Origin: Salisapilia sapeloensis CBS 127946
Lineage: Eukaryota; Protista; Oomycota
DNA: 64,000 nucleotides
Reading direction: 5' to 3'
NCBI GenBank assembly: GCA_023334545.1
Contig: JAADVB010000038.1
Coordinates: 1 to 64,000 of the forward strand
Shown here piece by piece: positions 984 to 51,328 of the stretch. The position numbers and the translations under genes were made by a program. How positions within the stretch are numbered: position 1 is the stretch's first letter; each line of letters opens with the position of its first letter. The notes below the pieces were generated by a model that saw nothing but the letters and a program-made list of their open reading frames with translations, was not told where the DNA came from and ran no database searches.

Positions 984-1041
984 CCAAATTCGGCAAATGT
1001 CTTGACTTTTGTATACTTTCCACCAGAACCATTCCCGAGGT
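984..1041. promoter_or_regulatory. Putative 58-bp bidirectional core promoter
   Basis: Spacer between two divergent ATGs. CCATTCC on + and ACATTTGCCGAATTT on - resemble the oomycete initiator (YCAYTYY) and flanking promoter region consensus. Confidence 0.4.
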
Positions 1042-13759: not shown

Positions 13760-13855
13760 CCCAAGAAATACAAACTCCTATTCGTGGCAATCTATGCAAA
13801 ATTCCTCTCCATCCAAACCTCGAAAGTAGCCATTTCTATACTTGGTATCAGCAGC

Positions 13856-15577
13856 ATGAAGTACTTGGCTGTCACGGGCGGCACCGTCTCCGGTCTTGGC
13901 AAAGGCATTACCATCAGTTCCATTGGTGTCATCCTCAAAGCCTGTGGTCTCCGAGTTACTTCGATTAAAATCGACCCGTACCTCAATTGTGATGCTGGGA
14001 CCATGAGTCCATTCGAGCATGGCGAAGTCTTCGTGCTGAATGATGGAGGCGAATCCGACCTGGATTTAGGCAATTACGAGCGATTCCTCGACATTACGCT
14101 ATCGAGAGACCATAATATCACCACTGGCAAAGTCTATCAGCGAGTGCTCGAAAAGGAGCGTCGAGGTGACTACTTGGGCAAAACGGTGCAGGTCGTGCCC
14201 CACGTGACGGACGAGATCCAGGCGTGGGTCGAGCGAGTCGCCCAAGTGCCAGTCGACGGATCTAGCTCCCAGGACACCAGTGCCGAGCCGGCAGACATCT
14301 GTCTCATCGAAGCTGGTGGGACCGTCGGTGACATCGAGAGCATGGTCTTCCTCGAGGCGCTCCGGCAGTTCCAGTTCAAGGTCGGGCCAGAGAACTTCTG
14401 CCTCGTCCACGTGAGCCTCGTCCCAGTCCTCGGTTCCGTCGGAGAGCAGAAGACCAAGCCGACGCAGCACGCCATCAAGGAGCTCCGGAGCGCCGGACTC
14501 AGCCCGGATCTGGTCATCTGCCGCGCGTCCAGTGAGCTCGAGCTCGCGACGCGCGCTAAGATCGGCATGTTCTGCCAGGTCTCGGCCAACCACGTCTTGA
14601 GCGTCCACGACGTGAGCAACATCTACCACGTGCCGCTCATGCTGGCCAAGCAGGGCGCAGCGTCCATCCTGCTGTCCAAGCTGCAGCTCATGAACCGCTT
14701 CCGGGAGCCGCAGCTCGAGACGTGGCAGGCCATGGCCGAGCGCGTGGATAACTTCTCCGAGACGTGCCGCATCGCGCTCGTCGGCAAGTACACTGGTCTC
14801 CAGGACTCGTACCTGAGCGTCATCAAGGCGCTCAAGCACGCGACGATGAAGTGCGACCAGGACCTCGACATTGAGTGGATCGAGGCGGGTGACTTGGAGG
14901 ATGAATGCAAGGCGTCGGACCCGGAGAAGCACGCCGACGCCTGGGCGAGGCTCAAGGCCGTCGACGGCATCGTCTGCCCCGGCGGCTTTGGTGACCGCGG
15001 CGTCGACGGCAAGGTCCTGACGGCGCAGTACGCGCGAGAGAACAAGGTGCCGTACCTCGGTATCTGCCTCGGCATGCAGGTGGCTGTCATCGAGTACGCG
15101 CGCAACGTGCTCGAGTGGAAGGGCGCGAACAGCGAAGAGTTTGACGAAAAGGCCGATCCCAAGGTCGTGGTCTTCATGCCGGAGATCAATCCGGACGTCA
15201 TGGGCGGCACTATGCGCTGTGGAGAGAGACGCACTGTCCTGCACGAGAAAGAGGGCTATCGGAGCATCGTGTCGTACTTGTATGGCCGGAAGACGGACAT
15301 CCTGGAGCGCCATCGCCACCGGTACGAAGTGAACCCGGAGGTCGTGCCGCAGATGCGTGACGCCGGACTCAACTTTATCGGCACGGACGACAAGAGCGTC
15401 CGGATGCAGGTCGTGGAACTCGACCGGAAGGTCCACCCGTTCTACTTTGCGACGCAGTATCACCCGGAGTTCAAGTCCCATCCGACGGCGCCGTCGCCTC
15501 CGTTCCACGGCCTCATCCTCGCCGCCACGGGCCAGCTGCAGAAGTACATGGACGACTGCGACGCCCGCGGCTTCTAG
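13856..15577 (+). CDS. CTPS: CTP synthase
   Basis: '[12 protein letters not shown]', 'KIDPYLN', 'GGTVGDIES', and the glutaminase triad motifs 'GICLGMQ' and 'QYHPEF'. Confidence 0.97.
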
Positions 15578-15678
15578 ACGTGTCGGTCGAAACCTCGTAG
15601 CTAGATTCCTTTTAGTAAACGAACGAGAGACACCTCCTCTTTGCTCGTGTACATGCAAGTCCAAAGCCAAATATATTT

Positions 15679-17562
15679 TTATCTGCGTCGAGCTACCATC
15701 CCCGCCACGAATGTCGCCACTGCCAGACCTGACAGCACGTACGCCAGCACCGGAACGTCCCACTCGTCCTGGATGTCCAAGTGCTTGATCATAAGCTCTC
15801 CCTCGCCCTCCACCTCGTACCCGAGGCGACGGTAAAAGTTCCGGACACCCACGCCGGCGATGACCGCAACCTTCTTGGCTCCTTGCTCCCGCGCAATCTC
15901 CTCCGCTCGCCGCATCAGCCGCGTGCCGAAGCCTGTGTGCTGGGCGTGGGAAGCGTCTAGATCGTCCACGCCGCCGTTCGCCGGTACCTCCACCACCTTC
16001 TCCTTCTTCTTCCCGGCGAGCACTAGCTGACCGTAGACATGTAGCTCTCGCACGAGCGCCGCACCTTCGAGCTCGGGGAAGATGCCTCCTCCAGCCGTCG
16101 GCGACACCCGCAGCCGAGCGAAGGCACAGATCTTCTTCCTGTCCGGCGTCTCGTAGCTTAAGAAGTACTCGTCTCCGCCGTTCGCTCTGTACTTGCGCTC
16201 GACGAGCTCCGCGGCGGCGATGGCCTTCTCGTCTGTCTTAACCTCTCGGCAGCGAATGCACTTGCACCGCTGTCCTCGCTCGGCCATCTTATTCGCAATC
16301 ACCTGCCGGAGGTTGGGCTCATCTGCGCCGCCGAAGATGTATTGGCTCGGGATGTCTCGGATGACGCGATTGAGGCGGATCCACGGGTGCACCTGGCTCT
16401 TGACTCGCATCAAGAGCTCCACCATCTCCTTCTCGCTGTACGGCACAAAGTCGCCCTTGTCGTACCACTTCTTTATGACCGTCCACGGCGTGATTTCGCA
16501 CGGATAGATCTTCCACTGGTCCGCCTGCAGGTCCTCCGAGTGCAAAACGTACTCGAACATCTTCTCATCCTTCTCGGCGTCGCTGCCTGGCAAGTTGGGC
16601 ATCAAGTGGATGTCCGTCTTGTAGCAGCAGTCTCGAAGCAGCTGCAGGGCCTTGACGGCGTCCTCCGTCGTGCACCCGCGATTGATCTTCTTGAGGATGT
16701 CATCGTCCGTGTGCTGCAGACCGAGCTGCACGCGCGTGCAGCCGTATCGTCGGAAGCGCCGCAGTTCCTCTTCGTTAATGCAGTCCGGACGCGTCTCGAG
16801 CGTGATGCCGATGATTTTGGTCTGCGCCGTCTCGTTCGCCAGCTTTTCCTCGTCCAGCGACATGCGCTCTCGGCGGTTCTCGACTGGGTCGAAGAACGTG
16901 TTCGCGGCGTAGAACAAATCCCGGATGAACGTCTCCTGGTACTCGTGCGGATACGACGCCCACGTCCCTCCCAGCACCAGCAGTTCAATCTTATCGACCG
17001 GGTGTCCGTTCATCGCGAGCGTCACGGCCCGATCGGCGAACTGGAGGACAGGGTCAAAGTCATTCCGATTCGCTCGCAAGACACTCGGCTCGTCATGCAG
17101 GTAGCTTCGCGGCTGATCCGGTTCGTTCGGACAGTAGTAACAATTCCACTGACAGCTGAATCGCTGCTTCTTCCCTCCTACTTCCGGATATGGACTCGTG
17201 AGCACCGTGATGACGAGGACACCGGATTGACTCTTCTGGGCCTTCTTCACAAGCAGTCGGTCGATCGCCATTCCTTTCTCGACTTCACCTTTCTGGATGA
17301 GCGTGTTTAGCATGAGCTTCATCTCGGACTTGCGAGGAAGGCAGCGGAACTCTCGCCGCAATTGGACAAAGGCCTTTTCGAGGTCCCGAGGCGTCTGCGG
17401 ATCGAGGTCGACGAGAAAGCGGACCATGTCTTCGTACAACGGCCGCTTTTCCGCCGGCACGAGGTTCTCCCATGTCGAGTAAATGTCCTCGAGCGTCTCG
17501 TTCTTCCAGTCCGGACCTTGGATGCTCCGTTTGTACGTGTTCGGGTCCTCCAAGTCGCCCAT
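15679..17562 (-). CDS. ELP3: Elp3-like radical SAM/GNAT acetyltransferase with a C-terminal transmembrane tail
   Basis: CxxxCxxC ('CQWNCYYC'), 'GITLETRPD', 'VQLGLQH', 'RELHVYG' and 'QHTGFGTRLM..AE', followed by a hydrophobic tail ending in RRR. Confidence 0.88.
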   Translation of the reverse strand: MGDLEDPNTYKRSIQGPDWKNETLEDIYSTWENLVPAEKRPLYEDMVRFLVDLDPQTPRDLEKAFVQLRREFRCLPRKSEMKLMLNTLIQKGEVEKGMAIDRLLVKKAQKSQSGVLVITVLTSPYPEVGGKKQRFSCQWNCYYCPNEPDQPRSYLHDEPSVLRANRNDFDPVLQFADRAVTLAMNGHPVDKIELLVLGGTWASYPHEYQETFIRDLFYAANTFFDPVENRRERMSLDEEKLANETAQTKIIGITLETRPDCINEEELRRFRRYGCTRVQLGLQHTDDDILKKINRGCTTEDAVKALQLLRDCCYKTDIHLMPNLPGSDAEKDEKMFEYVLHSEDLQADQWKIYPCEITPWTVIKKWYDKGDFVPYSEKEMVELLMRVKSQVHPWIRLNRVIRDIPSQYIFGGADEPNLRQVIANKMAERGQRCKCIRCREVKTDEKAIAAAELVERKYRANGGDEYFLSYETPDRKKICAFARLRVSPTAGGGIFPELEGAALVRELHVYGQLVLAGKKKEKVVEVPANGGVDDLDASHAQHTGFGTRLMRRAEEIAREQGAKKVAVIAGVGVRNFYRRLGYEVEGEGELMIKHLDIQDEWDVPVLAYVLSGLAVATFVAGMVARRR

Positions 17563-18037
17563 CGTGATACGCACTGGATGAGCTTGGCTTTCGGTGGTCA
17601 CTTGGCACGAGCAATTGTTGGTCGTGGTTGGTGGGAGTACATTTAGCACACCGTCTGAAGTAGCCCAACTTATGATCGGAGGACGGAGACCAAGGCGAAT
17701 GGACCGGTGTAGATTACTAGATTAACAAGGACGATACCGTACATGTCGGTTCTTCAAGTACATCAGCAATGAGTCATGCGTTATCCATTTCCTACTAATA
17801 GACAAAAGTAGACGTATGATGTCGATGGACAGTCGAAACCTATCCGACGAAGGATGTACCCATCCGCTCGAAACGCAACTAGTCGACGGATACGCACTTC
17901 CTGAAGACTCGAATCGCCCTCTTCTTCCGACACAGCGAATTACTTTCGCTACTTCAAATCGAGATAAAAATTGTTTTTCGTAAGAAAGCACTTCCGAATG
18001 CAAACTGTTCCATTTACCACTTCCCAATCTGCTCCGA

Positions 18038-19150: not shown

Positions 19151-20389
19151 TTAGTGCTTGTCGCTAGCTTCTCCTCTTTCACTCGCGATTACACTAGCCA
19201 ACAGCTTCTTCTTACGCTCTGCCTGCTGACGAGAGCTCTCTTCCATACGCGCTATAAATTCTCGTCCGACATCCGACCACGCGTTCAGGTGGCGGTACTT
19301 GACGCCGCAGTTCTGACACCGCTTCTTCTTGTCTCGCAGCTCCGAGTACGTCTGCTCACACAGACAAATCGGGCAGCTCTTCTTATCCTGCCAACTCAAA
19401 TCAGTCCAAACAATCCGACCGTCCTGTTTATCGTAGCACATACCACACGCACGTTGTACTCTTCTTCCAGACGTCTCTGCTCTAGTTTCTACACCCCAAC
19501 TCAATTGGACTACCGACAATATACCTCCACATGGAAACCAACGTACCCGCTGCCGATTGCGCTCGGCTGTCTCCATCCGTGTAAGGAACTCATCTCGAGA
19601 GCCGGAGTCAAAGTCTTCCGAGTTGTCAGACCCTCGATTCCCATGACGACGCTTTAGTTGGAACCTGCAGTTCCTTTCCTCATCGTCCAGCGTATACTTT
19701 CGTCCATTCACCTGGACTCTGTGCGGCTGAGCCAACTGCTCAATCCGATCCTACAAACACAAATGAGCTTCCATCGCTACTCTCCTCTACGCCTTGCTAT
19801 CCAAACACCGTACCGGGACCTTTGCTGGGCACATATAGAACATTAGCTCATTCATCATCCGACAGAACACTCATACGCTAAACAAGGACAGCGTACATGA
19901 TGCAAAACGAAGTGTATTCTTCTTCATCGAGCCGTCCACATCCGCACGACTGGTCTTCTCCATCAGCCGTTGCTTGAACAACTGCACTCTCGTCGGACTG
20001 AACAACACATTCGGATACAGACTCGTGGTCGACGAGCCTCTAGTCTTTCGATTCGCTTGAGTACGCTTCGGCTTGTTAGCGTGCATTGCCGGCCCTTTTC
20101 GATGCTCTCGGCCTTTGAGTGATTGGTGGAGTACTGAGCCAAGACTATCCTCTGCTTTCACTGGAGCGTCCTTCACCTGGCTGCTTTGAATCGCAGTCAC
20201 CTTGGCCATCATATCTGCAAGGTCATCATCACTGTCACTGTACTCGTCACCAGATGAATGCAGCTGGTCAGACGCATTCGTATCTGCTTTGCTCGAGCCC
20301 AGCTTTCGCTCCGATCCATTTTCATCGTCATTCACGAATTCCTCTTCATTGTACTCTTCGAATTCGTCTTCCTTATCCATGCCTGTCAT
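19151..20389 (-). CDS. Hypothetical protein with an acidic N-terminus and Cys-pair (zinc-ribbon-like) C-terminus; probably multi-exon
   Basis: Two same-strand ORFs (19871-20389 and 19151-19735). Cys pairs 'CGMC', 'CPIC' and 'CQNC'. Joining them into one gene is inferred. Confidence 0.45.
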
Positions 20390-21899
20390 TGCACTCTTGG
20401 TTGATCTAGATGTTCTCTTTTATCTAATAATAGAGCTATCAACTGCACATCCAGACATGCCACAAAAAGATCTAAATATACGTGAAAGCCACATCTGATG
20501 CATCCTGCAGTGCGAAATCTTTCTACAAACAGGATGAAGCCAGTTGAAGTAGCGTATCTGGTGTCTGAAAGAAGGATTAACGATTTTTACCCGTCTAGAG
20601 TCACTAATCCGTACCAACTATTCGCGAATTTACCATGATATCCTCCAGCGCTTGACTCTTTACCAGCGAATTGAGTAGGGAGGAACAAAATGAAGCAAGA
20701 TGTGTTGAAATTGATCGAAGTTTGTCTGCCCTCAGCTCAAAAGGCGACGTACATACGGAAGCTAGATTACCCAAGCGAAGCGAATGCAAGCGAGTGGGCT
20801 GCACAGTATTATTTCGATCCAATCAATCTGTCGGCGACATGATTTTCATCACCTCGTACACAGTATACCTTTACCAGATTACCGACATTGCTTGTTTAAT
20901 CAACAACATGCACAAAATTCATCACCGTCGATACACCACAAACTCTTTCCCAGTAGCAAGATGCTATCTTTTGCGCTTGCAGACAGGTACTAGTCTTGAG
21001 GAAGCCAAGTTTGCGGAATGCTGCGTTACCTCTAGGCTCGAGAAAAGGTCGGTACTATCCATCATCTGAAAGCGGTACATGTGTAGATACGCCACTTTGG
21101 TAAAAGGCACAAGCAGCATCTTGAAGACAGCCGGTCCTTTCCAAAAACCGTCCAGTGTTCTAGGAGCAGAGCTGGAAAGTGAACGATACATGTGCGCGCG
21201 GGATGTGGGTTACCACTAACGCTGCTCCTGGTATCGTGCACATCGTCTGAGCATTGCTGCATGCGATAGCAGCCCTCCTCCTCCAGCTCGTAGGACCATC
21301 TAGCGCTCCACAGAACAGAACTTCATTCCTGAGGACCAAAGATCACAAATACTTCCGAAGCGACACTTGGGCTGCCGGCGCTTGACATGGAAAAAATCGC
21401 ACAGGACGGGTATAAGCATGCAGCTATTCCTGCTTGTTTAGAGAATCTATGGACCGCTCAGCCACGATAAGGTGTACATGCATGCTAGCTAGCTGTCCTG
21501 TATCGTGTGGTGAACGATGCTGCATTTGTACGCTTACAACAGGCTTCGAAACCAAGCTACAAGCTCTCGTGTGCTTGGAAGGTGCATGCAGACGGAATGA
21601 AGCGGAGACTATCACAGCTAAGCAGGTTCCTACTCGCATTAACAAGTGCCAACCTGCTCGTCCGAAACGCGAAGATTTCAACTAAATAACTGCCTTCGCT
21701 TCTCAAGGTTATCTTCGAGAACCAAAACACAATGCTTGCGTGATAATCGTTTTAATTGCTGCCTCTGCCCCATGCTTGCTGCAATATGACTTTCCTCCTC
21801 GTCCGTGTAGAACTCCGGGTGACAAGCATTCCCACGTGAATGTTAGCTTTAAGTCAAAACAGAGCTACAATAACACTGGCTGACTAGCTATTTCTTACA

Positions 21900-24800
21900 G
21901 TCGTTCCAGCTCACACTTGCTGCCGATGAACTAGCTTTTGCGACTGTAAGGAACGTCATGAGAAAAGCATCTCTAAATACAATGATGCTTTATTAAATAA
22001 GCTTTTCGTCTAAGAAGTTTCAATAATTTAATATTTTACTAATTTTAAGCCTATCAAAGCGTGTACGGCAATGAAGTTTTTGTTTGTGGCGCATTACACA
22101 AAAACTCTCAAAATTTTAACATTATGTGAAGGTTATAACTTTATAACATACTCAGGTCTAAATTAATAAAGAAATGGCAAATGCAAACACAACAACTGCG
22201 TGACATCGCAAAAGCTGAAAAATAGCAACTTCTATGCTATTTAGAAAACACTTTTATTTGTAAACAAATATTTGTCTGTTTATAACAGTAGAAAAAAAAT
22301 TTACGATATAACAAAAGGCTATAAACGTATAGCTGTAGTGAAGATCAAAAATTCCACAGGTATGGTTTCATAAAAACCACATGGAATGTTTCGTAACTAC
22401 CGTCGCAAACTGTTCTACCTTTTATATTTATTTCTCATGTACTATAAAATTATAAACTAGTCGTTTATCATTAAAAATTGCAGATAGTAAATTTAATTGC
22501 AACGCAAACCACAACCAAAAACTGTAAGCACTACCACATCAACTATAAAAAATTTAAACTTTAAAATATAATCCTATATATTAATACAACAAAAAGTTAG
22601 CACTGTAAACATTATAGATTCATATATGTTGAACAAGACACGATACGCCATATAATACTTTATCTAATTAAAAACAATGTGTGAAGTTAAAACAAAAACA
22701 GTATTTACAAACTCGGAGGTAACATTTTCAACATAGTTAAATGGTAGAGCTAAACATTCACAACATGACTGTTTAGAAAAATAACACTAGACGATAACAA
22801 GCAAATATTTTGTTTAAGCAAAAACAGCATACAAAAAGGCTTTATTAAAATAACAAGTAAAAAACAGAAAAATTGTATATGAAATTTTATTACAAAGATA
22901 AAAATGCTACTTTATATAGAAAAAGGCAACTCATGCAAAAATAAATGCTGCCAATGTTTGTTTATTAGTGCATGAATAACCAAACGATGAAACAATGCGA
23001 AAAAACAATATAACACGATACTACATGTATTAAGAACTGTATTATAAACATTATGCAAAGTTTTTACAAATAAAAAAATAAAAGTACACTTTAATTGCAA
23101 TACACATTATATGTAAAGTTTCTTTGTTTGTAAACATTTATAGCAGTTGCTCTATAAAAAATAACGAAATTGCGTATGCAAAACACAACAACAAATTTAC
23201 CAATATTGTCAAGTTTATTGACACAGCAAAATATTAATTAATTAATATTAACTTGTCGTATAATAATTTTGCGTGATATTTGAATTTAAAAAAAAATTTT
23301 TACTTGACAACTTCAAAAAATTGAATGCAGAATATTTACAATAATACAAAACAAAATAGTAGAGTATTTAGCTCAATTAATTTAAAATTCAGTTATTTAT
23401 TATATTTATTTTTTGTATGCTTATGTATGAAAAAGACTAAAAATTAATACAATAGTAAATATTTAAACGCCTATAAACTAACACTATTTAAAACATTTAA
23501 AAAAAAAATAATACTAAATTCAAAAGATTATGTTTTAAATAAATTTTTCTGCAGTAAATCTGTAAAACACAGTGTGTTTTATTGTGTCAAAATAGGTTAG
23601 ATTAAAAAAACATCAATTTTTTATATATAATATTGACACATTATTTGTGATCTGATAGATTTGCATCGAATGTGACAAACTACATTGTGTTTGTATGCTG
23701 TGTTTAAACTTTCTAAACATGACTTTATGTTTATGTTTTTAATCTAGCTTACGTAAATACTATATATATAAAAAAAATTTAACAACAAATTATATCTCTC
23801 AAAAAAATATTGTTTTAACGCTGACAATATAAAATTGATTAATGCGTTCGTTCTTCAGGTTTCTACTTGTGTATGAGACAAGCGATTTTTTTTGTTAAAT
23901 TTTGTTAAACCTATTAGTTTTTTACATAAATCTCTTTTTTAGACTATGTAATTGTTCTTTAAATGAGTTTTTTGTCAAGTATGTATGTATTTAGTTTTGT
24001 TTTGTTCGATGTGTCGCATTTTGCATATAATTTACTGTAAGTTCGTAAATGCTTATTGGTTTAAAGAAATACAAGGCGTACTTGTACTTTGTAATATTTA
24101 CAACTAAAAGATAAATACGCATGATTTTAAGGCTAAATATAGTGAAAAACCCTTCATTTATAAACTGTCTATTGACAATGTGTGTTAAACTCTTGTTATT
24201 CTTTTAGCTATCACATAAAGCGCAATGTTTTTCTTTTTTTTTACGTTCACATTTTATATAGAATTATTATAATAATATAAAGACGTCTGTAGACATTTAG
24301 CAGTTTAACATATTTCTTTTTGACAATTACATATAAGTTATATTGACAAATTTGTTACCTCTAAAATATTTGTGCGTAGCGGTGTTATCTTAAGAAGAAT
24401 ATATTTGTTTGTTTTTAAAGCAATACATTTAAATAGAATATGTTGATTCATTATTAGTTCTACATATTGAAACGGCTATATATGTTTAGCGTTGTAAAAT
24501 AAAGTTGTAAGCTTGTGCGAAATTTCAACACTAATTTTGCATCTACATATGGATTTTCGTTTTCATGTAACAGTAGAACATTGTAGAACCTACCTATATC
24601 TAAGCGTAAGTATAATTTATCTGTATGTACAGTTGCAGTTTATAATACATGCTTTTAGAAATGTGTACCTTCTTGTGATAGAGGTTTTCGTACATCTTGC
24701 CTTAACTTTGCCGCGATGTTATATACGACTAGCTTGGCATATATACCAACTAAAATTGATGTAGAAACTGCGCTAATGCTGTTTAGCACAAGTTTGATGT

Positions 24801-25500
24801 GGTAATTGTATCGTGTTGTTTTGTTAGATACTATTATGATTTGAGTCTTATAGAGGTTGTTTAAACGTGACGTTGCGCTCGTCTTATTAATCAAGGTTAT
24901 TTTGCTAATTTTCCTGATGTATTCTTGTGTACTATTCAAGCTTCTGCTAAACACTTTGTCGATCTGGCTCACGTATTTATTATATGTATCATGAAGAGCT
25001 TTAGATTAAAGAATGCATTTGTAAGGTATTTAGTTCGTTTACAGCCTTTTGGTATGCTCCGGTTACTAGGAGCGTTCAATTTGCTACTTCATTGAGTGAT
25101 CTTACATACCATACGTATTGGTGTATACCTGAGGACTTATGGTGATCAGCTAATGTAAACATATATAACTAAGCCACTTAAATGGTAACTCAAAGTCGTT
25201 GCTGTCGTTCTTGGCGTTATTAGCTTCGTTCCCGCGTCCTGGAATTTTCTAAGTATAATTTTCTTTGAATTTATAGATCGCCGTTCTCTTAAATTGAGTC
25301 TGGCACTACAAGCACATAAAATCGTTAAAAGTAATATGCCATTCATATATATACTCTAGTGCTTGTGTCGGTGCTGTTGGAACAATGTTATTTTATCTTA
25401 TATTTCGATGGCATATTTCAGGGATTTACTTTCAATGTTATGCTTGTTTGCAATTACACCTGTTCTATGAGATGGTTGCTTGGCTATCTATGCTGGGATG
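21900..25500. other. AT-rich, ORF-poor trough with a strand-skew inversion (candidate centromere/origin)
   Basis: Hand counts: line 23401 9/60 GC, 23461 9/60, 22861 10/60, 24241 13/60. No credible ORF. A- and C-rich top strand on the left, T- and G-rich on the right. The composition is certain; the function is inferred. Confidence 0.6.
23206..24349. repeat. Dispersed cluster of TTG(A/T)CAA and TTGACA motifs
   Basis: Full heptamer at 23206, 23304, 23972, 24172, 24320 and 24343. One-mismatch copies at 23218, 23584, 23633, 23672 and 23821. Confidence 0.7.
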
Positions 25501-27531
25501 TGATGCACATGTACTAGGCTCGACGAAGCTAGTAGCTACAGACGAACGATAGGCACACGTTGCTGTTTAAATTAGCTTACAAGCTTCACCTTTCTTATTT
25601 TGTCCGACACTGTTGCTCGACAAGCCTCCCATGCGATATGATCGCTTTTAGGTAGGCTGACTAGCGTGTGTTCGACTAATTGCCGACGACAAATGCTCTA
25701 GTAGAGTGCCGGTTTTGAACGTTGTAGTTGAACAAAATCAATAGGCATGTGAAAGGCGGTCTGAGCTGCCTGGATTGCTATTTTGTATATAGTATTTCAT
25801 TAGTTTGGAATCATGACTATTTTGTAGATCTTTCCGTCGGTGAATGTACTGGACACGGCACTGCCTACTGATTGCATGTAGTATATGTGCGCGAATTCTT
25901 CAGCTCGAATTTGCGGCAAGTCAACGCACAAGAGTGGAGCTATATGATGTTTGCATGGTTCACATCCAACACAGATATACTTCGAAGTCTGCTGCTTATG
26001 TACACTGACTGTACTGCGTTTCGCAATATAACAAAGAATGTCTTGTTCGGTGCTGTATAAGGCAAGTCGAAATACCAGTACCTGGATTATCTGCAACCAC
26101 TCGAGCTCTTTTGTTTACATCAGGAGCACAACGTTACCACAGTTGGGATGAAGCGTTCTCACAGGCTAGGCATAAAAATCTTTTTCGCGTGCAGCAATAT
26201 TACTCGTCTAGATTACTGCAGGACGTCGAAATCAGCTATTGAAGAAAGTAAAGTTTAAAATGTACAACTTCGTAGCGAAAAGTGGCAGCGCACAAGCTGC
26301 TGTCTGGAAATAGAGTACTGTACTCGGTTTTCTTCAACTCTTTTCCTATTGCTTCCTTTCTATACGCTTCGGATTGGTTAACGCACCGTGAGATGCTTCG
26401 CTTGGAGACTTTTGGTGTCATGTCATTTTCAATTCGTGGCTAGTTGTCGTGCGCGACCTCACATTGGATGCCAATACGACAGTCGTGTAGCAAATAGAAT
26501 TCACTAGGTCCTAGATGTACTGACCGCGTTAAGTAAAGCACACTGCTTCATCAATGCCGCAATTCGCTTGCTAGAAAAAGAAGCATGCGACTCTTGTCTC
26601 TCACTACTAAACTACGTTTTCACAAATCTTTATGCATGAGCAGGCAGTAGGATCAGAAGTGGGCCGAAGAGAAAGATCCACTGCTTTCCGTAGGTCCAAA
26701 TCTTGTGTCATAGTCTGTACCCTGAATAGGATTGTAGTATGAACAGTAGCTACGATTGATGTAATCAAAACGACAAGCTTCGTCGGTGAAACGTAATGCA
26801 GGTCAAGTTTGTAATCGCACTTTGACTACTTTAGTACTTCCCGAATACTTTTGATATGAATTGAGATTTCACGGACACTAGACACCGGATTCCATCGTTA
26901 AAGTAGAATGTGTAAATCTAGTGTCTATAGGTCAAGATCCTGGCCGAAGCGGTATTTGTTGTCGTACGAGTATGATGTACTTCAGCATTAATCTCTGTCC
27001 GTAAGCCATTCTTGATAAATAGCACATTCTCTACATGCAAGTCTTGCTACGACGTACCTTTTATCCTAAAATAGTAAATCGAAACGTGAAAGCAGTAGGA
27101 GCAAATCATACGCTTGTCTGTACACAAAGCTATTATGTACTTGGCAAATTTGCGACTTATGAGCGTAACTCCATGGCATGTTTCCGTCAACTTCAATAAA
27201 TGGGCAGCTCAAAGCATATCGGCCCGCCGTGGGCAGAGTAAATACTATAGAATTTCGATTTGATCACTATTGGACTCTACCATAATAGGTCCTGTAGATA
27301 TGTCTAGATCACGGTGTCCACTTCCAAGACCGATACCTGTGTTTCTGTGCCGATGGAGACTCTATTGCCTCTACTTTCAACATGGAAAACTACGTCTTCG
27401 TCTAAATCTCATATCATATTTCCTGCTCTGTCTAGGCCTCATCCGACCACCTTCGGCATGCAAGGGACATCGTCATGCAATATTCGAATAGAAAAGAAGG
27501 ACGGTTCGTGTTGGTAGTCGAAAGTCTATTT

Positions 27532-30500
27532 CTACCTACGTCGCTTGCTGAGACGCCATGCGTCCTGCGGATTGAAGCGGTCGTACAGCGGCTCGATCTT
27601 TTCATTCCGCTTGCGCTTGGACAGTTTCGACGGATCTCCTTTCTTAAAGAACGCAGGCGCGAGTTCCACGAGCCACTTGGGCTCAATCGTCATGATCTGG
27701 CGCATGTACTCTTTCGTCGTCAGCACGAGTTCATGGTAAAGCAGCCACTCTGGACTCTTGTTGAAGAGCGCAGAGGACGGGTGGATGTAGACTGGCTGTC
27801 CCTCGACCATGGTTCTGTAGCCTTCCTGCGGATCCTTCTTGGCCGTGTTGGCGAAGTAGCCCGACACGATGGCTTTCCGTACCTTGTCGTAGCTCTTTCC
27901 ACACGACACGACGTCCATCTTATATCGATCCAAAATCGCCAGCAGCTGCTTCCGGACGTCCTGCGCTCTCCGAATGGCTCTGGCCTGGATAAAGTTCTCG
28001 TAGCACCAGGGGTTGGAGAACTTGCTGTTCTTCCAGGCATCGTAGACCGCCAGGAGCGTCAGGTGGTCTCCCTCTGGCTGGTGGAACTTGGCTTTCTTCT
28101 GGTCCGCCTGCGCCTGCTTCTCCTTGGGCCGGAAAAAGATGTTTTCGACACTGAGCATAGCGACGATCGTGAGCACCTCCTCTGCGCACCCCAGCACGAC
28201 GCTCGTGAGCAGGACCTTGGCGTTCTTGGGCTCGACGGGAAACTCGGCCATTTTCCGGCCGAGTCTTGTGAGCAGCCCTTCGTCGTCCAGCGCACCGAGG
28301 GCAAAGAGGTTTTCGAGGGCGCTGACCATGGCTTGTTGGGGCGGAGGGTCCATGAAGTCAAAGGCCAGGAGGTCGTTGACGCCCATGGCTTTCAGCTGGA
28401 GGACGACGCTGCCGAGGTTGGCTCGCTGGATCTCGGGCACGGTCGTGGGAAGCATTTCGTTCTTATACGCGTTCTCGGTGTAGAGTCGGTAGCACTTGCC
28501 CGGCCCTGTCCGCCCAGCTCTCCCCGCGCGCTGCCTCGCCGACGCCTGGGAGCAAGGCACTACGACGAGCGAGTCCATGCCGATCTTGGCGTTGAAGGCG
28601 TTCTGCTTGCAGAAGCCAGGGTCGACGACGTAGTAGATGCCATCGATGGTGAGGGAGGCCTCTGCGATGTTGGTCGCCACGACGCACTTGCGAGAGCCCT
28701 TGGGCGCCGGCTCGAAGATTCGGGACTGCATCTCGGACGGGAGGGCTCCGTAGACGGGGAGGATGATGAGCTCTGGGGCGAGAGCTCTGTCTTGGAGAGA
28801 CTTGATGCGCTGGTACAAGACTTCGCAGGCCGTGTCGATCTCCTCTTGGCCAGTGAGGAAGAGCAGGATGTCTCCTTCCGGCTCCGACAGGTGGATCTGC
28901 ATGACACACAGGAGCGCTGCGTCCAGGTAGTCCGTCTCCGGTTCCTTGGTGTATAGAATCTCGACCGGGAACGTCCTGCCTGGGATGGTAAAGATCGGGC
29001 AGTCGAAAAAGTAGCGAGAGAACTTGTCTGCATCGAGCGTCGCAGAGGTGATGATGAGCTTGAGGTCCTTCCTCTTCCTCGCGAGGTCCTTGAGCAGACC
29101 GAAGAGGACGTCCGTGTTGATCGTCCGCTCGTGCGCTTCGTCCAGCATCAGAGCACTGTATTTCGAGAGCGTCGGGTCCGCCAAGTACTCTCGCAAGAGC
29201 ATACCTTCCGTCATGTACTTGATGATGGTCTCGGACGACGTGCAGTCCTCAAATCGCATGCTGTACCCCACCTCCTGTCCGAGCTCACACCCGAACTCCT
29301 CCGCGACACGCTTCGCGACAGAAGACGCGGCCACTCGTCTCGGCTGCGTGCACCCGATCAGCCCCTTGGACGTGAGGCCCATCTCGGCCATGTACTGCGT
29401 CATCTGCGTCGTCTTGCCGCTGCCAGTCTCGCCGATGACCACCAGCACCTGGTTGTCCGCAATGGCCTCCATCAGCTGCTTCTTGAGCGTGAACACCGGG
29501 AGCGACTGCCGCTGCTCCAACAGAGACTTGTTCGACACGATCCCGTACGACAGGTTCTTCCCCATGCTCTTTTGCTTCCACTCGGGCTGCTCCGACACGC
29601 CGCCCATGTTGATGCCACGAAGCTCCTGCGCAAAGTGTCTGTCCCCAGCGTCAGGCATCGGGTCTTCCCACGGACGATTCAGGTCCTTGGGAATAGACTC
29701 GATCAGCTCGTTCGCCTGCGCCTGCCGGAGCTCTCGACGCTCCTTGGCCAGACTCGACTGAGTCAGAGCAGCCCGCTGGAGCGTCCCGTCGGGGTTCTTG
29801 ACGATCTTGACGGGAGACAGGTCCTTGGTGGCAGCTGTCTGTCCTCGGAGGAAGACCGGCTCGTCCTCATTCAGCTCCACCTCGTAGTTCTCTTCCGTCT
29901 CCTGGGCGTTCAAGACGCCTTGGTCCTCGTCCAGCGTCGGGTAGTCCTCCATCGACAGGACGCCAGAGTTGATCAGCTGACGAGCCTCCCACCGTTCCGG
30001 AGACGACATGCGCTTCGACATGCGCTGGACCTTGCCATCGTCCTGCTGCGTCTGGTGGCTCATGCCAGGCGCAGACGGATTCACCCACGACCGGTCCGAC
30101 CTCGCAGCCTCTGCCTTGGCTTCCGACAGACCTTCCGACGACCGCATCGGCTTGAGGTCTTCGCCCGTCCGCTGGTCCACCTCCTTCATGGACATGCTGA
30201 GCTTCCGGCCGTTCTTGCTGATGACTTTGACTTTGACCCGGTCTCCTCTGCCTAGCACGTCCTTCGGATTCGACACGCGCTCCCGACGGATGTTGGAGAT
30301 GTGGACCAGACCTTCTCGGTGCTCTGCTTGGACGTCCTGGAGCTCCACGAACGCCCCAAAGTCCATCAATTTCACCACTTTGGCGTCGTAGATTCCGTAT
30401 AGCTCTAATGTCCGAGGGGGAGACCGGCCTCTGCGGCGCCGACCGAACTCGTCTCTATCATCCGACCGACGAGAGTCGTCTCGACCTCGACGCTCTTCCG

Positions 30501-30834
30501 TCGTGGCCATGTCGGACTCTTGGAGACCTGGAATGTCCGACACGGTTAAAGGACCTTCTGGCTTGGAAGAAGGCTTCTTCGCTTTTGCCTTGGCTGGGTT
30601 CTTCTTTGCCGGAGCAGCCGTCATGGTCTGTACGATCCGATGGAGGTTCTGGGCCAGAGCCGTCGGCAGCGGCAGGTCGTTGGCCTTGATGGCCTGGAGG
30701 AAGTCGTCTACAGACGGATTCTCACGGACCATGTCGATGACAAACTCCGCGACGGTCTTGTCACTCATGCCTAGATGTGTCTCGAGCTCCGTGCATACCT
30801 TGGAGACGAGCGATAGTTCCTGCAGCTTGTCCAT
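27532..30834 (-). CDS. PRP22: Pre-mRNA splicing DEAH-box helicase Prp22/DHX8
   Basis: S1 domain ('[13 protein letters not shown]'), '[12 protein letters not shown]', '[10 protein letters not shown]', 'DEAHER', 'SAT' and 'QRAGRAGR'. C-terminus 'KIEPLYDRF...AWRLSKRR'. Intronless. Confidence 0.97.
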
Positions 30835-33928: not shown

Positions 33929-35068
33929 TTAGGCTTGTTTGGGTTTCCGGCTGCGGCCATAGTAGACGACCGTGGTGTCCATGAAGACACCGTAGAGGAC
34001 TTGGAAGAGAACGAGGACGGGAGACAGCAGAGACTCCAAACACGTGTTGTCTCGACGCGTACCACCGTTGGCCAAGATGCGCAGGATGTAGCCTGCGGCA
34101 TCACTTGCAATCGAGTACTGACCATTCGCCATGCCTTGGATGAGCGACTCGGCCACCTTGTCAGGATGCTCTACGTCACTCGGACCCTCAATGACCATCG
34201 TCTCCTTGGGCTTGGTCTTGTTCTCCTCCGCGTACCCTGGCGAGTCGATGTTGCCAGGGATGAAGATGCGGACGTGGACGCCCTGAGGCTGCATCTCCTT
34301 GGACAGCGCCTCTGCGAAACCTCGGAGAGCGAACTTGGACATGCTGTACTGCTGGTAGCCGACGAACGAGATGATGCCAGCAGCAGAGCTGACCATGACG
34401 ACCTGTCCGCCGGCCTGGATGTGCGGCAAGGCGGCCTTGACCGTGTTGACGCAGCCGAGGTAGTTGATCTTGACGGTCGAGTGGTGGATGCTCACGTCCT
34501 GCTCTTCAAAGTACCCTGGTTTCGCCACGCCGGCGCAGCAGATCAAGTGGTCGATCGACTTTTCATGGAATCTTTGGGCGTTCTCCACGGCAGATTGGAC
34601 CGCCTCGAGGCTGCAGACGTCGCAGGACTGTGTGAAGATCGGAAGTCCGTTCGGACATGCTGACTCTAGCTCCGACTTGGCACTCTCGAGAACACTCTCC
34701 TTCCGAGAGACGATCGACACCTGATGCAGTCGTTAGATGTATCGGTAGGCTCTAGCTAGTTCGTAGGGAGAAGTACTTTGGCACCAGCGGAGAGGTATCG
34801 TTTGGCGACGGAGAGTCCAAGGCCTTGGGAGCCACCTGTAGTGTACTGGTTAGATGGTGGGTGGTGAAGGTAGAAGGGAAGGACGCACCGGTGATGAAGA
34901 CGTGCTTGTCCTGGACGTGCCATCCTGGTCGATTGCGCTTGGAGATGACGCTGGTCTATTCTCTACGGTCATATATGGATGGTGGAGTGGAAGGTGGGGA
35001 CGTACGACGACAGCTCCGACTGCTAGGACGGCGTAGAGACCCAGTGGGTAGTACCAGATCGACTCCAT
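33929..35068 (-). CDS. KDSR: 3-ketodihydrosphingosine reductase (KDSR/Tsc10), multi-exon
   Basis: N-terminal hydrophobic anchor, 'DKHVFITG', 'GGSQGLG', 'YQQYSMSKFALRG' (YxxxK), 'PGNIDSPGYAEENKTKP' and a C-terminal hydrophobic segment. Confidence 0.82.
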
Positions 35069-37965
35069 TGCTACTTGTCGCGAGGTAGGTCGGATTGTCA
35101 AGTCTGATCGTATCAATTGTTAGAGGGAACAAGTCTCCGGCACTGGAGGAGCTGTCCAGTCTACCAGCCTTTTGTTATGTACGCTAGCTTTATGGACACA
35201 GGGAATTTACTCATATGCACCACTTCTGGCTGTGGGTAAAAGTATGGTTGCCAGTTACCAAGTGCCAATAGTTAGGACAGTGCTATAAGGAATGTACTTG
35301 CCTGCACTGAGTTTGTAGACACACAGTGGCCTTGTTTGTACGAATTGTCTTTATAAAGGTTTTTGGTTCTATGAGTTTGGGCTGTTGCTTGATTGCAGCA
35401 CCATAGTGGCGCAAGTGGAGGGAATAATTTTTTGCCTCAGTCTGCTCTGGATAGGACACCATGCCCATCGATCTCGTTGTAGCACGATACAGAGATAATT
35501 GCGAGTTCATTGCAAAGTTACGCTCATCTAGATCATGCTGAGCTACCACAGAACAGTCTATCTCGATACTTATCGGAGGCTTTCTTGCATGCACATGGAA
35601 GGACGTCCTTTGGCTAATAATTGTACGAATGCCTACGCTGATATCTGTAGAGGATTCTATGTATTTACAATATCGAGAGCATATCTATCTTTCAGCAGTC
35701 GAAACCCAACTGGGATGCGGTCTTAATGGTAAAGAATCTGGCTACGCACTAGATGTCCGAAGGTCTCTTGTCATGCGAGTCATACCACTACGACAAAATG
35801 CTTGTATGTGATACCTTGCAGCGAAATGTGCTCATACGATACGATTGTACTAGAGAGACACGTTTGATTCAAATCGAATACACACGCTAACGAAACTTGG
35901 CACGAAGGATCGAGATGGCGGCACGAGTTACAGGCAGGATATGTAGACATGAGGCAACATCACACTTACTGGGACATGGTGTGCACGATAATCGAGATAG
36001 ACGATTAGACCACTTCGTGTTGCATCGATGCCAGTAACTCGAGTCGCTTTAACGTTTGCAGTAACACACGCCAAGTATCCGATCATACGGTCATCTACAC
36101 TGTTTCATCATGTTTAACATGCACACACTAGAGGTTCTTGTAAAGCAAGCACTATCGATATATAAGCTGCACCACTGGTCACGACGAGGTTTCCGATGTC
36201 GACACCCGTGAGCGCCGTTCGAATATCAATTGCATCTTCCAAACTAATCAAGCGATCGGTGCAGCTTGGAGGTAGTTCTGTCATCTTTGTTTATACGCTG
36301 GTAATATGCACAGTCATCTGAACACAGGCGAGTGCTATCCGCAGTGACGCTCCATCTAATCTTCAAGATACATCCTGGAGATGTTTCCTAATGAGTATAG
36401 ATAAAGATTCGAGCAAGACAGTCTAGACGAATGGCATACTGATGCAGTCTCCTGATCTGCAGTGTATTCTCTACGGCAGTGCATGGAAAGTGAAGGAGAG
36501 ATCTGGTAACTTGTGGCTGATCTGTTCGATAAGTGTTTATGCTACGGAACCTGATCTGTCTGTTTACTTTCTGGCTGATCCTCTCTTTCATGTGAACCGG
36601 CACACGAGCTTTTATCTGGTCAGATACATCCTGCAGAGCGAACACACGGATCCAGGTATAGGCAAGATGTGCATTACGTTCTAGCATGGAGGGTTGATGC
36701 TTGGAGAGAGCAGATTGCAGCATGCCATGCGGAATATGTATTAGAATCGGATCGGAAGCGTAAATAGACTAGTGTGACTTGCAGTGGCGTGCTGAACCTC
36801 AATACCACTCCGTTCAGAGCTGTACTAATTAGCCACGCTGTCGTAATCTCCACAAGAGTACTCGTCTATGGATGAAAGTGCGGACGTCAAGCAGGGCGTT
36901 CCAACCGCCTATACTCGTGTCCATTGTCTTTGCCTCAGTATCTTGTACCGTGTAGCCATGTAAGCAAGCTCCAATTGCGATTCCTACGATCGATGCTAGT
37001 CGTCCTATTTTCTTGCTTTTAACACGACCGAGCACGGAGCGAGATACGCTTCGACCCAGCAAGTAGCATTGCAAATGTAAAAACGTCGTACATTCCTTTT
37101 TCCCATGACGCACGTGACTACAAGATGGGCGTTTCATAGCAGACTAACTTTTGCGATGCTTTCGTGCTATCGGATTGAACTTTTCGCTGTCAATTCGTCT
37201 TGTTGTGGCGTCCGAGGCTGAAGGACCCGACGGAAAGAAGGGTAGATGGTATCGACTAGTTGGTCACGAAGCGAGTATTGGAGCACAGAAGGATAGAATG
37301 TGCCGTTAAGGTACCCCTCCTAGGTTACCATCCATATTCTTCCATACTTGTTCTAGTGAGACGCTCGTGGAGGCGTTTCCCTCCGAGCCTGTAGAGTAAA
37401 GGCACGACAGCAGAACAGGTCAAGGACGGAAGATTAGAACGAGGCAGCGGCCCCTCAGGATCGGACAATTCCACGACAGCGTGTCAATCTGGGACGTATC
37501 GGATGGCTCCATGATCTTTTTTTCTCTCTTTTCTTCTGCGTCCGCACCCAGGTGCCCCTTGCACGTCTACTAGATGTATCCTGTGTTGCCTATCTTCCCT
37601 ACTCTCGAGCGTATAAGCAGGATGATTCTGCTAGAGGACGAGCGAACAGGAGGCTGGTCGCTCGACGTATAGATCGTGGCCACAACGGGCGATGCGGCTG
37701 GGTTACCAACGGCTTGGCGCGTCATGTGCATTTCCAACCAAACGCAGTTCCTTTGGTCGCACTTGGGCTTTGTATCGGGGGAGGCCGTTGGATTGAAAAA
37801 AACGTCTCGCCTCGGTGATTTCCAACACGACGACGCGCACTGGCTCTCCATGTTGCTCACTACCACCTCCGACCTCATTTCCCCATCGCCATCTCTTGCT
37901 CCAAGTCTCTGTGCACACGCCGTGCCACGGATTCCATCGGAGTTTGAATCGATACAATAGAGACC

Positions 37966-44707: not shown

Positions 44708-45316
44708 GTTTTGATGCTGGACCGCAATGCACGCGTCTTGCCTATGCTTGAGTCTTTTGACTTTCTTTACATAATTTTTCGGTCTTCTTTGCTATCCTCC
44801 TATCAGCGCAATGAACATACCTCCCAGAGATACGAACTAGAGCTTTGAACTCTTGGTAGTAGTATTCACCACGATATGGAAGATGATAGCTGCAGCAACA
44901 AACGAAACGAATACACTTTCTTTAGCACGTTTCAAGACAATTTACGGTTCGAACTGGAGTTGATATGTCTAATCATGTCTTTCACATGCACTTGCATTGC
45001 TCTTGTTCTGTTCATAGAGCATTGCCAGTCCATCTTTCCACACAGCAAACGTCACATACAGAATTTGTTGAAATGAATACTAGATACTAGATGCGGCAGT
45101 CTAAAGTATTCATTTCTTCCGCACGAAACAATGCTACTCTTTTCTTCCGCAACAGGAATTTCTTGCATCCTTGCGTTCGACTACAATGAACTATAGTAGA
45201 TAGGCAATTTAATATTCCTTTTAGATATTCCAATACGAACTATCTTCAGTCGTAACCACGGACAGAAATACACACGAATTTCGTACCAGCACTTTCACCT
45301 GACTAGTCATAGATTC

Positions 45317-51287: not shown

Positions 51288-51328
51288 GAATGGTCAAATA
51301 GACTACATTTGTCTTGAATGGAACTTGT

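What the first reader, a model, noticed from the sequence alone, without database searches (positions are those of the whole stretch)
22000..25200. AT and GC skew both invert inside the trough: signature of a long-lived bidirectional replication origin
Seen (hand counts per 60 nt): left side line 22801 A30/T16, line 22861 A31/T19, line 22501 C16/G3. Right side line 23881 T34/A15, line 23941 T31/A15, line 24361 G12/C4. The switch lies around 23.4-23.85 kb. Known: leading strands tend to become G+T rich, so a top strand that is A/C-rich on the left and G/T-rich on the right is the polarity expected of an origin, and such skew flips have been reported at Candida albicans centromeres. Inference: forks have started here constitutively over evolutionary time. 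No genes are present to explain the skew through codon bias.
Basis: partly seen in the sequence, partly recalled or inferred. Interest (0 to 1): 0.7.

Follow-up and report, generated by a model that had tools for sequence, protein, structure and literature searches.

The report
Strand-skew flip inside AT-rich island
A gene-free, very AT-rich 3.6-kb island in a compact oomycete chromosome switches from A/C-rich to T/G-rich at its centre, as small yeast centromeres with built-in replication start sites do, but sequence alone cannot show that DNA copying starts there.

Summary
All six hand counts are exact. Cumulative A-T peaks at 23,616 and cumulative G-C bottoms at 23,521. The A/T change point is 23,617 (95% support 23,518-23,843). 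No block shuffle (0/5000) gives as deep a V, and it is the deepest in the 64-kb window.

The flip is not an old palindrome, a repeat, an oriented motif, an excess of A/T runs or decayed coding sequence. It is a diffuse, mirror-symmetric composition bias centred on the GC minimum.

There are two layers:
- **Local A/T skew:** strong (jump about 0.33) and confined to 1.5-2.5 kb per side.
- **Broad G/C skew:** weak (about ±0.1). It also appears at four-fold sites of flanking genes whatever their strand (p=0.025), and the whole-window G-C minimum is at 23,521.

The host is an oomycete. The island is unique in the window, repeat-free and sits at a synteny break. It best matches small GC-poor yeast centromeres, where such flips are known and their replicative cause is disputed.

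A long-lived origin is possible but unproven. Earlier scan notes describe the same flip on other pieces of this genome; I did not test them.

The parts
21900..25500 (.). AT-rich, gene-free island. GC is below 35% with a graded V-shaped profile: 16-23% at the centre, rising to about 39% at 1.5-1.75 kb on each side.
   Evidence: No repeats or tandem arrays. No Rfam family or tRNA. ORFs of 50 aa or more have no Pfam match.
21900..23525 (+). Left arm. The top strand is A-rich and C-rich, so the bottom strand reads T/G-rich outward.
   Evidence: AT skew +0.155 and GC skew -0.089. T/A skew on the outward strand is positive in all six 250-nt bins out to 1.5 kb.
23512..23843 (.). Switch zone, given as the 95% support interval of the keto/amino and A/T change points. 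Best estimates are 23,526 and 23,617. It lies 100-300 nt right of the GC minimum.
   Evidence: cumulative extremes at 23,521 and 23,616
23526..25500 (+). Right arm. The top strand is T-rich and G-rich. The skew continues weakly into the shoulder, to about 26 kb.
   Evidence: AT skew -0.160 and GC skew +0.095. The outward T/A skew is positive in all ten 250-nt bins out to 2.5 kb.
20390..21899 (.). Left shoulder. Gene-free, 45-50% GC, with weak skew of the same sign as the left arm.
   Evidence: GC skew -0.062, TA skew -0.055. Only short ORFs without coding-like GC3 or Pfam matches.
25501..27531 (.). Right shoulder. Gene-free, about 42% GC, with weak skew of the same sign as the right arm.
   Evidence: GC skew +0.010, TA skew +0.046. 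No ORF of 100 aa or more. No relic of the genes that follow Prp22 in relatives.
19871..20389 (-). Nearest ORF on the left (172 aa, acidic, weak coding signal). Its 5' end faces the island.
27532..30834 (-). Nearest gene on the right, the DHX8/Prp22 RNA helicase. Its 3' end faces the island. Both flanking genes are on the minus strand, so they are not a divergent pair.
   Evidence: Pfam; orthologues 77-87% identical in oomycetes
23206..24349 (.). Cluster of six TTG(A/T)CAA heptamers around the switch. This is the subject of a separate finding; it is enriched, but only modestly once the number of words tested is considered.
   Evidence: 6 observed against 1.1-1.3 expected under Markov-1/2 models; the top 7-mer has z=4.2

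Best explanation
The flip is the footprint of a strand-asymmetric process that runs outward in both directions from a fixed point. That point is the centre of a small, unique, AT-rich centromere-like island of the kind known from Clavispora/Candida yeasts and Yarrowia, and compositionally like diatom centromeres.

Shown here:
- The island exists and is gene-free.
- Its two arms are compositional mirror images with no shared sequence.
- The centre of symmetry coincides with the GC minimum.
- A weaker G/C asymmetry of the same sign reaches into flanking genes at silent sites, independent of gene strand.

Inferred:
- The island is held at mutational equilibrium (AT-rich) because it is a recombination- and selection-poor chromatin domain, most likely a centromere.
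- The asymmetry that becomes visible there comes from forks that habitually start at its centre, a centromere-linked early origin as in C. albicans.
- The strong local A/T skew and the weak broad G/C skew may have partly different causes.
For: - Coincident, highly significant flip, the deepest in the window.
- Arms are mirror images in k-mer spectra: left versus reverse-complemented right r=0.98/0.95/0.89 for k=2/3/4, against 0.75/0.74/0.67 for left versus right directly. They show no alignable similarity (Smith-Waterman 22 against a null of 22.5±2.8).
- The asymmetry is diffuse. No oriented word exceeds what the single-base skew predicts, and A/T runs match a Markov-1 model of each arm.
- The skew pairs A with C and T with G, unlike the purine-rich sense strands of genes in this window.
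- GC rises gradually and symmetrically from the centre, with no sharp insertion edges.
- At four-fold sites the top strand is C-rich left of the island in + and - genes alike (-0.17, -0.19) and G-rich on the right (+0.02, +0.11). The side effect is +0.105±0.041, permutation p=0.025, and peaks at or next to the island.
- The whole-window cumulative G-C minimum is at 23,521.
- The island is unique, ORF-free, repeat-free and 3.6 kb long, and it lies at a synteny break relative to six relatives' loci, none of which has a trough.
- Literature: skew flips occur at small regional centromeres, with A/T skew plus a GC drop in Yarrowia and C. lusitaniae (PMC2924309), and GC-poor, ORF-free 2.5-4.5 kb centromeres with GC and AT skews occur in the C. 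auris/C. lusitaniae clade (PMC8262905).
Against: - There are no chromatin, replication or RNA data.
- Known oomycete centromeres are 100-350 kb, rich in Copia-like transposons and of ordinary GC (PMC7082073; PMC11139960).
- The local A/T jump (about 0.33) is several times larger than accepted replication jumps (about 0.09 in yeast), and it fades within 1.5-2.5 kb. These are the arguments used against a replicative cause at Candida centromeres.
- T/A skew at four-fold sites does not flip with side.
- The broad G/C effect rests on only 23 genes (p=0.025).
- Transitions alone cannot make the skew, because outward strands carry 319 more pyrimidines than purines out of 3,601 bases. Simple cytosine deamination on exposed strands is therefore not a sufficient mechanism.
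- One island per chromosome could not be checked here.
Confidence: 0.4

Rival explanations
1. The island is centromere-like, but the skew has nothing to do with replication. It would reflect some other centre-symmetric feature of centromeric chromatin, such as low-level outward transcription of the core, asymmetric repair, or selection on strand composition for CENP-A or kinetochore assembly. This is what has been argued for C. albicans centromeres.
For: The large local amplitude and short range of the A/T skew match the criteria used to reject a replicative cause in Candida (PMC3459929). The purine/pyrimidine imbalance cannot come from deamination-type transitions. T/A skew at silent sites of flanking genes does not flip.
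Against: The G/C skew at four-fold sites flips with side and not with gene strand, out to 10-20 kb, and the window-wide G-C minimum is exactly at the switch. A purely local chromatin effect does not predict this. There is no sign of selected motifs, runs or helical periodicity.
Confidence: 0.2
2. This is the first reader's reading taken strictly: an ordinary but very efficient and long-lived bidirectional replication origin that is not a centromere. AT-richness would serve as an unwinding and ORC-binding element, as in fission-yeast AT islands.
For: The turning points coincide and the polarity matches bacteria and human. The lowest-GC 250 nt (16%) lies next to the switch. The broad G/C skew is consistent with it.
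Against: A compact genome needs many origins, yet this 64-kb window holds a single such island, and ordinary intergenic regions show nothing similar. The same amplitude and range objections apply. A 6.5-kb gene-free zone in a genome with intergenic gaps of a few hundred bases is more than an origin needs. The skew direction for oomycetes is unknown.
Confidence: 0.15
3. Outward (divergent) non-coding transcription from a bidirectional promoter at the island centre produces transcription-coupled asymmetry. The island would then be a long non-coding locus or promoter desert.
For: In this window the sense strand downstream of stop codons is T>A (+0.05 to +0.09) and slightly G>C. That is the same sign as the outward-reading strands of the island.
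Against: The baseline bias is two to three times weaker than in the island. The flanking genes are both on the minus strand and do not diverge from the island. It does not explain the G/C flip at silent sites of genes on both strands. No RNA family was found.
Confidence: 0.15
4. The pattern is a historical accident: two unrelated AT-rich pieces, a decayed inverted duplication, or decayed foreign or organellar DNA that happens to have opposite composition on the two sides.
For: The island lies at a rearrangement junction relative to relatives.
Against: No residual inverted or direct similarity. The GC profile is graded and symmetric rather than sharp-edged, and the skew switch sits at the GC minimum. 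No tRNA, rRNA or ORF relics. Earlier scan notes report the same polarity at other islands of this genome (not tested here).
Confidence: 0.05

Closest known systems
Small regional, GC-poor centromeres of the Clavispora/Candida clade (C. lusitaniae, C. auris, C. fructus) and of Yarrowia lipolytica, with GC/AT skew flips (PMC2924309; PMC8262905)
   Same: A unique, repeat-free, ORF-free island of a few kb in a deep GC trough. A/T and G/C skews change sign together at its centre. As in Yarrowia and C. lusitaniae, the A/T skew is at least as strong as the G/C skew and GC drops locally. It lies at a synteny break.
   Different: The host is an oomycete (stramenopile), not a yeast. CENP-A binding, early replication and one-per-chromosome are not shown. 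No clear GC3 trough appears in neighbouring genes: Prp22, the nearest gene on the right, has GC3 0.79.
Candida albicans / C. dubliniensis centromere skew with a constitutive early origin (Koren et al. 2010, PMC2924309)
   Same: The same logic and polarity: G and T enriched on strands reading away from a zero-crossing inside a 3-5 kb centromere. ORC and the earliest replication were shown there.
   Different: There the G/C skew dominates (a jump of about 74%) and GC content is raised. Here the A/T skew dominates and GC is very low. The replicative cause in Candida is itself contested (PMC3459929).
Replication-origin skew jumps in bacteria, in human N-domains and in S. cerevisiae
   Same: GC and TA skew change sign together. 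A weak G/C asymmetry (about ±0.1) persists at silent sites of flanking genes regardless of gene strand.
   Different: The local jump is several times larger than typical values (about 9-14%) and is confined to the island. The T/A component does not persist outside. In yeasts the polarity is reversed (leading strand A/C-rich), so polarity is not diagnostic.
Diatom (Phaeodactylum tricornutum) centromeres (Diner et al., bioRxiv 10.1101/096016)
   Same: A stramenopile. A 2-5 kb unique region containing at least 500 bp below 33% GC, with no repeats or conserved motif.
   Different: No skew is reported there (the word does not occur in the text). Function was shown by CENH3 ChIP and episome maintenance, neither of which is available here.
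Phytophthora sojae-type oomycete centromeres (PMC7082073; PMC11139960)
   Same: The same broad lineage, and a gene-poor, presumably silent region.
   Different: Those are 100-350 kb, rich in Copia-like transposons, of genome-average GC and heterochromatic. This island is 3.6 kb, transposon-free and 20-28% GC.

Membership tests
Replication-origin skew jump (bacterial / human N-domain type) | GC skew and TA skew change sign at the same position | tested here: met
   Change points are 23,617 (A/T) and 23,572 (G/C). Cumulative extremes are at 23,616 and 23,521. The G/C change point has a wide support interval (22,590-24,381).
Replication-origin skew jump (bacterial / human N-domain type) | Polarity: the strand synthesised as leading strand carries the excess that is typical for the lineage | tested here: inconclusive
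   Outward strands are G/T-rich as in bacteria and human, but yeasts have A/C-rich leading strands (PMC3459929). The direction in oomycetes is unknown.
Replication-origin skew jump (bacterial / human N-domain type) | Modest jump amplitude (about 10%) | tested here: not met
   The A/T jump is about 0.33 and the G/C jump about 0.19 inside the island, against 0.09 at S. cerevisiae origins.
Replication-origin skew jump (bacterial / human N-domain type) | Skew persists at neutral sites far beyond the origin, independent of transcription direction | tested here: inconclusive
   At four-fold sites the G/C side effect is +0.105±0.041 (permutation p=0.025) and the window-wide G-C minimum is at 23,521. 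The T/A side effect is absent: +0.03, p=0.56.
Replication-origin skew jump (bacterial / human N-domain type) | Initiation demonstrated (fork-direction switch, ORC/MCM binding, early timing) | not testable with these tools
   No replication data are available.
Small regional GC-poor centromere (Clavispora/Candida, Yarrowia type) | ORF-free, unique, repeat-free region of a few kb in a GC trough | tested here: met
   3.6 kb below 35% GC inside a gene-free zone of about 6.5-7 kb. No direct, inverted or tandem repeats beyond chance.
Small regional GC-poor centromere (Clavispora/Candida, Yarrowia type) | GC and AT skew flip at the centre | tested here: met
Small regional GC-poor centromere (Clavispora/Candida, Yarrowia type) | Exactly one per chromosome | not testable with these tools
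   Only this 64-kb window could be read, and it holds one island. The genome is not in the contig collection. Earlier notes list similar islands on other pieces, which I did not check.
Small regional GC-poor centromere (Clavispora/Candida, Yarrowia type) | CENP-A / kinetochore occupancy | not testable with these tools
   No ChIP data are available.
Small regional GC-poor centromere (Clavispora/Candida, Yarrowia type) | GC3 trough in neighbouring genes | tested here: inconclusive
   GC3 falls towards the island on the left (0.78, 0.63, 0.55, 0.55), but it is 0.79-0.82 in the three nearest genes on the right.
Diatom-type centromere | At least 500 bp below 33% GC within a 2-5 kb unique region | tested here: met
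   GC is 16-32% over about 3 kb.
Oomycete transposon-rich centromere (P. sojae type) | 100-350 kb, clustered Copia-like elements, genome-average GC | tested here: not met
   3.6 kb, no transposon ORFs or repeats, 20-28% GC.
Ancient inverted repeat / palindrome | Residual sequence similarity between one arm and the reverse complement of the other | tested here: not met
   Local alignment score 22 against a shuffled mean of 22.5±2.8.

The most novel reading that the evidence does not exclude
This oomycete lineage has replaced the huge transposon-rich centromeres known from Phytophthora with 3-4 kb, sequence-unique, AT-rich centromeres. Each would contain a constitutively firing replication origin, so that a simple skew-plus-GC scan would locate both the centromere and the earliest origin of every chromosome. 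The two-layer skew would then be the first sequence read-out of fork polarity in a stramenopile.
Probability: 0.33. Interest if true: 0.8.

Novelty: new variant of a known kind. Interest (0 to 1): 0.6.

Why it matters
If these islands are centromeres with built-in origins, oomycetes span both extremes of centromere design: kilobase AT islands and 100-350 kb transposon arrays. That would make them a natural system for studying how centromere type turns over.

Short defined centromere and origin pieces are also the missing ingredient for stable episomes in oomycetes, as they were for diatoms.

The case also bears on an open dispute over whether centre-symmetric skews at small centromeres record replication or something else. 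Here a strong local A/T layer and a weak broad G/C layer can be told apart. This suggests two causes and gives a concrete prediction for fork-direction mapping.

Tried and rejected
Explanations tested and rejected:
- **Ancient palindrome or inverted duplication:** rejected, no similarity above shuffles.
- **Direct, inverted or tandem repeats:** only short chance-level matches.
- **Selected oriented poly(dA:dT) tracts:** A runs dominate on the left and T runs on the right, and removing runs of 4 or more lowers the skew. However, run numbers equal what a Markov-1 model of each arm predicts. The runs are therefore a consequence of the skew, not a separate feature.
- **Helical (about 10.5 bp) phasing of AA/TT:** absent.
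- **Oriented sequence motif carrying the skew:** none beyond the single-base skew.
- **Strand-specific mutation context:** the TpC/GpA and CpC/GpG deficit and the GpC excess are the same on both strands, and CpG is not depleted. The context signature does not explain the flip.
- **Decayed coding sequence or codon bias:** rejected. There are no ORFs or domains, and the skew pairs A with C rather than A with G.
- **RNA genes or an organellar insert:** no Rfam match or tRNA.
- **Relics of the genes that follow Prp22 in relatives:** none in 20-27.5 kb.
- **Conserved island at the syntenic place in relatives:** none in six loci around Prp22 and Elp3 orthologues.

Attempts that failed:
- **Finding the same genome or its other islands:** three exact-protein look-ups found nothing.
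- **Transposon relics read through stop codons:** six-frame domain scanning of the island was not done, because the tools here do not take such translations.
Full report
**Observation.** The window averages 52% GC, with coding regions at 55-62%. It holds one long trough below 35% GC, from about 21.85 to 25.5 kb, reaching 16-20% at 23.0-23.7 kb.
- In the left arm (21,900-23,560) the top strand has A 713 / T 522 and C 232 / G 194.
- In the right arm (23,561-25,500) it has T 788 / A 571 and G 318 / C 263.
- Cumulative A-T peaks at 23,616 and cumulative G-C bottoms at 23,521.
- Likelihood change points are 23,617 for A/T (95% support 23,518-23,843, LRT 68) and 23,572 for G/C (support 22,590-24,381, LRT 8.7).
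- Shuffling 50-nt blocks never reproduces the V (0/5000), and it is the deepest such V in the window by a wide margin.

The A/T flip is beyond doubt. The G/C flip within the island is weaker but concordant.

**Anatomy.** The island sits in a gene-free zone from about 20.4 to 27.5 kb.
- The nearest ORF on the left (19,871-20,389) and the DHX8/Prp22 helicase on the right (27,532-30,834) are both on the minus strand. They do not form a divergent pair.
- No ORF in the zone has a Pfam match, and there are no Rfam families or tRNAs.
- GC rises gradually and about symmetrically from the centre: 16/23, 22/25, 26/26, 25/26, 30/34, 30/32, 39/39% in successive 250-nt bins left/right. This does not look like an insertion with sharp edges.

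**What the skew is made of.**
- The two arms share no alignable sequence, direct or inverted. The "inverted ancient repeat" refuter fails.
- They are nevertheless compositional mirror images. K-mer spectra of the left arm correlate with the reverse complement of the right arm at r=0.98/0.95/0.89 (k=2-4), against 0.75/0.74/0.67 for the direct comparison.
- A runs dominate on the left and T runs on the right, but their numbers are what a first-order model of each arm predicts. There is no 10.5-bp phasing.
- No oriented word is more asymmetric than the single-base skew predicts, and both arms show the same asymmetries.
- The dinucleotide signature (TpC/GpA 0.69, CpC/GpG 0.62, GpC 1.7, CpG 1.1) is identical on both strands.
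- The skew pairs A with C and T with G, whereas sense strands of genes here are purine-rich. It is not decayed coding sequence.
- Outward strands carry 319 more pyrimidines than purines out of 3,601 bases. Transitions alone, such as cytosine deamination, cannot have produced it.

**Range and amplitude.** Folded about the centre, the outward-strand T/A skew is positive in every 250-nt bin out to 1.5 kb on the left and 2.5 kb on the right (mean about 0.16), then vanishes. The G/C skew is about 0.09 over the same span. The local jump is therefore about 0.33 (A/T) plus 0.19 (G/C).

Outside the island I measured four-fold degenerate sites of 23 ORF-defined genes.
- The top strand is C-rich on the left in plus-strand (-0.17) and minus-strand (-0.19) genes alike, and G-rich on the right (+0.02, +0.11).
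- Regression gives no coding-strand effect and a side effect of +0.105±0.041 (permutation p=0.025). The effect is largest when the split is placed at or one gene right of the island.
- The cumulative G-C curve of the whole 64 kb has its global minimum at 23,521.
- The T/A skew at four-fold sites does not flip.

There appear to be two layers: a strong A/T skew confined to the island, and a weak G/C asymmetry spanning tens of kb.

**Organism and relatives.** Flanking proteins place the window in an oomycete. Prp22 is 77-87% and Elp3 73-78% identical to Phytophthora, Pythium, Globisporangium and Albugo proteins. There is no near-identical hit, and the genome is absent from the contig collection.
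- In three relatives Prp22 is followed within 100-200 bp by a short-chain dehydrogenase gene, followed in one locus (L002) by a SIP1 gene.
- In this window the SIP1 orthologue and its neighbour lie inverted at 0.3-1.6 kb, and the dehydrogenase lies at 33.9-34.8 kb. No relic of either lies next to the island.
- The Elp3 side is also rearranged relative to Pythium insidiosum, Albugo candida and Globisporangium splendens.
- None of the six related loci holds a comparable trough.

The island is therefore lineage-specific at this place and marks a rearrangement junction.

**Literature.**
- Koren et al. reported coincident GC and AT skew flips at all C. albicans centromeres and linked them to constitutive, earliest-firing origins. 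They used such flips to predict centromeres in C. lusitaniae, L. elongisporus and Y. lipolytica, and found that A/T skew with a local GC drop characterises the latter group (PMC2924309).
- GC-poor, ORF-free, repeat-free centromeres of a few kb with GC and AT skews were later confirmed across the C. auris/C. lusitaniae clade (PMC8262905).
- Marsolier-Kergoat argued that the Candida centromere jump is not replicative. It is far larger than real origin jumps (74% against 9%) and returns to baseline within 3 kb, and genuine replication skew in yeasts makes the leading strand A/C-rich, the opposite polarity (PMC3459929).
- Diatom centromeres are 2-5 kb unique regions with at least 500 bp below 33% GC, and no skew is mentioned (10.1101/096016).
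- Known oomycete centromeres are 100-350 kb, rich in Copia-like elements and of average GC (PMC7082073; PMC11139960).
- I found no paper describing short AT-rich centromeres in oomycetes.

**Weighing.**
- The step to "forks have started here constitutively" is not secured. The local A/T layer fails the amplitude and range criteria of replication skew. Polarity is lineage-dependent.
- In favour of a real fork-polarity component is the strand-independent G/C flip at silent sites with its vertex at the island. That rests on 23 genes.
- My best reading (0.4) is a small centromere-like island whose centre is a fixed point of a diverging, strand-asymmetric process, most likely a centromere-linked origin.
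- The rivals are a centromere with a non-replicative skew (0.2), a plain origin (0.15), outward non-coding transcription (0.15) and historical accident (0.05).

**Relation to earlier scan notes.** Notes on other pieces of this genome describe similar 2.5-3 kb islands with the same A/C-to-T/G flip, and one follow-up reports it for three islands. I could not read those pieces, so this counts as a lead only. If it holds, it removes the accident rival and makes the count per chromosome the key test.

**Verdict.** This is a real, highly non-random feature. It is a known kind of signature (the skew flip at a small GC-poor centromere or origin) in a lineage where it has not been described. The cause of the skew remains open.

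Noticed in passing
window 1-64000 (vertex at 23521): The cumulative G-C curve of the whole window is a V with its global minimum exactly at the island's switch point (-1048 at 23,521, -526 at the end). At four-fold sites the flip follows the side of the island, not the gene strand.
   Followed up: yes
window 1-20389 and 27532-64000, four-fold sites: T exceeds A on the top strand at four-fold sites on both sides of the island and in genes of both strands (+0.08 to +0.17). This window-wide top-strand T excess is unexplained and does not fit an origin model.
   Followed up: partly
window 23206-24349: Six TTG(A/T)CAA heptamers, all within 1.14 kb around the switch, against about 1.3 expected. It is the top-scoring 7-mer (z=4.2) but only modest after allowing for the many words tested.
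   Followed up: partly
window 270-1568, 33938-34759, 43645-44644; loci L001-L003: Gene order differs from relatives. The SIP1 gene and its neighbour, which lie just beyond Prp22 in locus L002, are inverted here at the far left of the window. The dehydrogenase (KDSR-like) orthologue is at 33.9-34.8 kb, minus strand. A second, weaker copy at 43.6-44.6 kb matches in split pieces. The island lies at the inferred inversion breakpoint.
   Followed up: partly
window 13784-17649; loci L004-L006: CTP synthase and Elp3 are convergent here, tandem in Pythium insidiosum and Albugo candida, and separated by a Zwilch gene in Globisporangium splendens. In G. splendens two Ty3-type retrotransposons lie 4-10 kb upstream of Elp3.
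   Followed up: no
window 21900-25500: Inside the island TpC/GpA (0.69) and CpC/GpG (0.62) are scarce, GpC is in excess (1.7) and CpG is not depleted (1.1). This holds equally on both strands. In the rest of the window TpC/GpA is 1.25 and GpC is 1.03.
   Followed up: partly
window 43884-57019: Genes from about 43.9 to 57 kb have much lower third-position GC (0.45-0.60) than genes in most of the rest of the window (0.75-0.86). This is a compositional shift unrelated to the island.
   Followed up: no
window, 150-300 nt upstream of 23 start codons: The sense strand upstream of start codons is C-rich over G (skew -0.10 to -0.16; 17-19 of 23 genes). The sense strand downstream of stop codons is T-rich over A (+0.05 to +0.09).
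   Followed up: partly
window 34800-38400: The gene-free gap at ordinary GC between the dehydrogenase gene (minus strand) and the FYVE/DnaJ gene (plus strand) shows the strongest inverted V of keto skew in the window (depth 169). This is the opposite polarity to the island.
   Followed up: no
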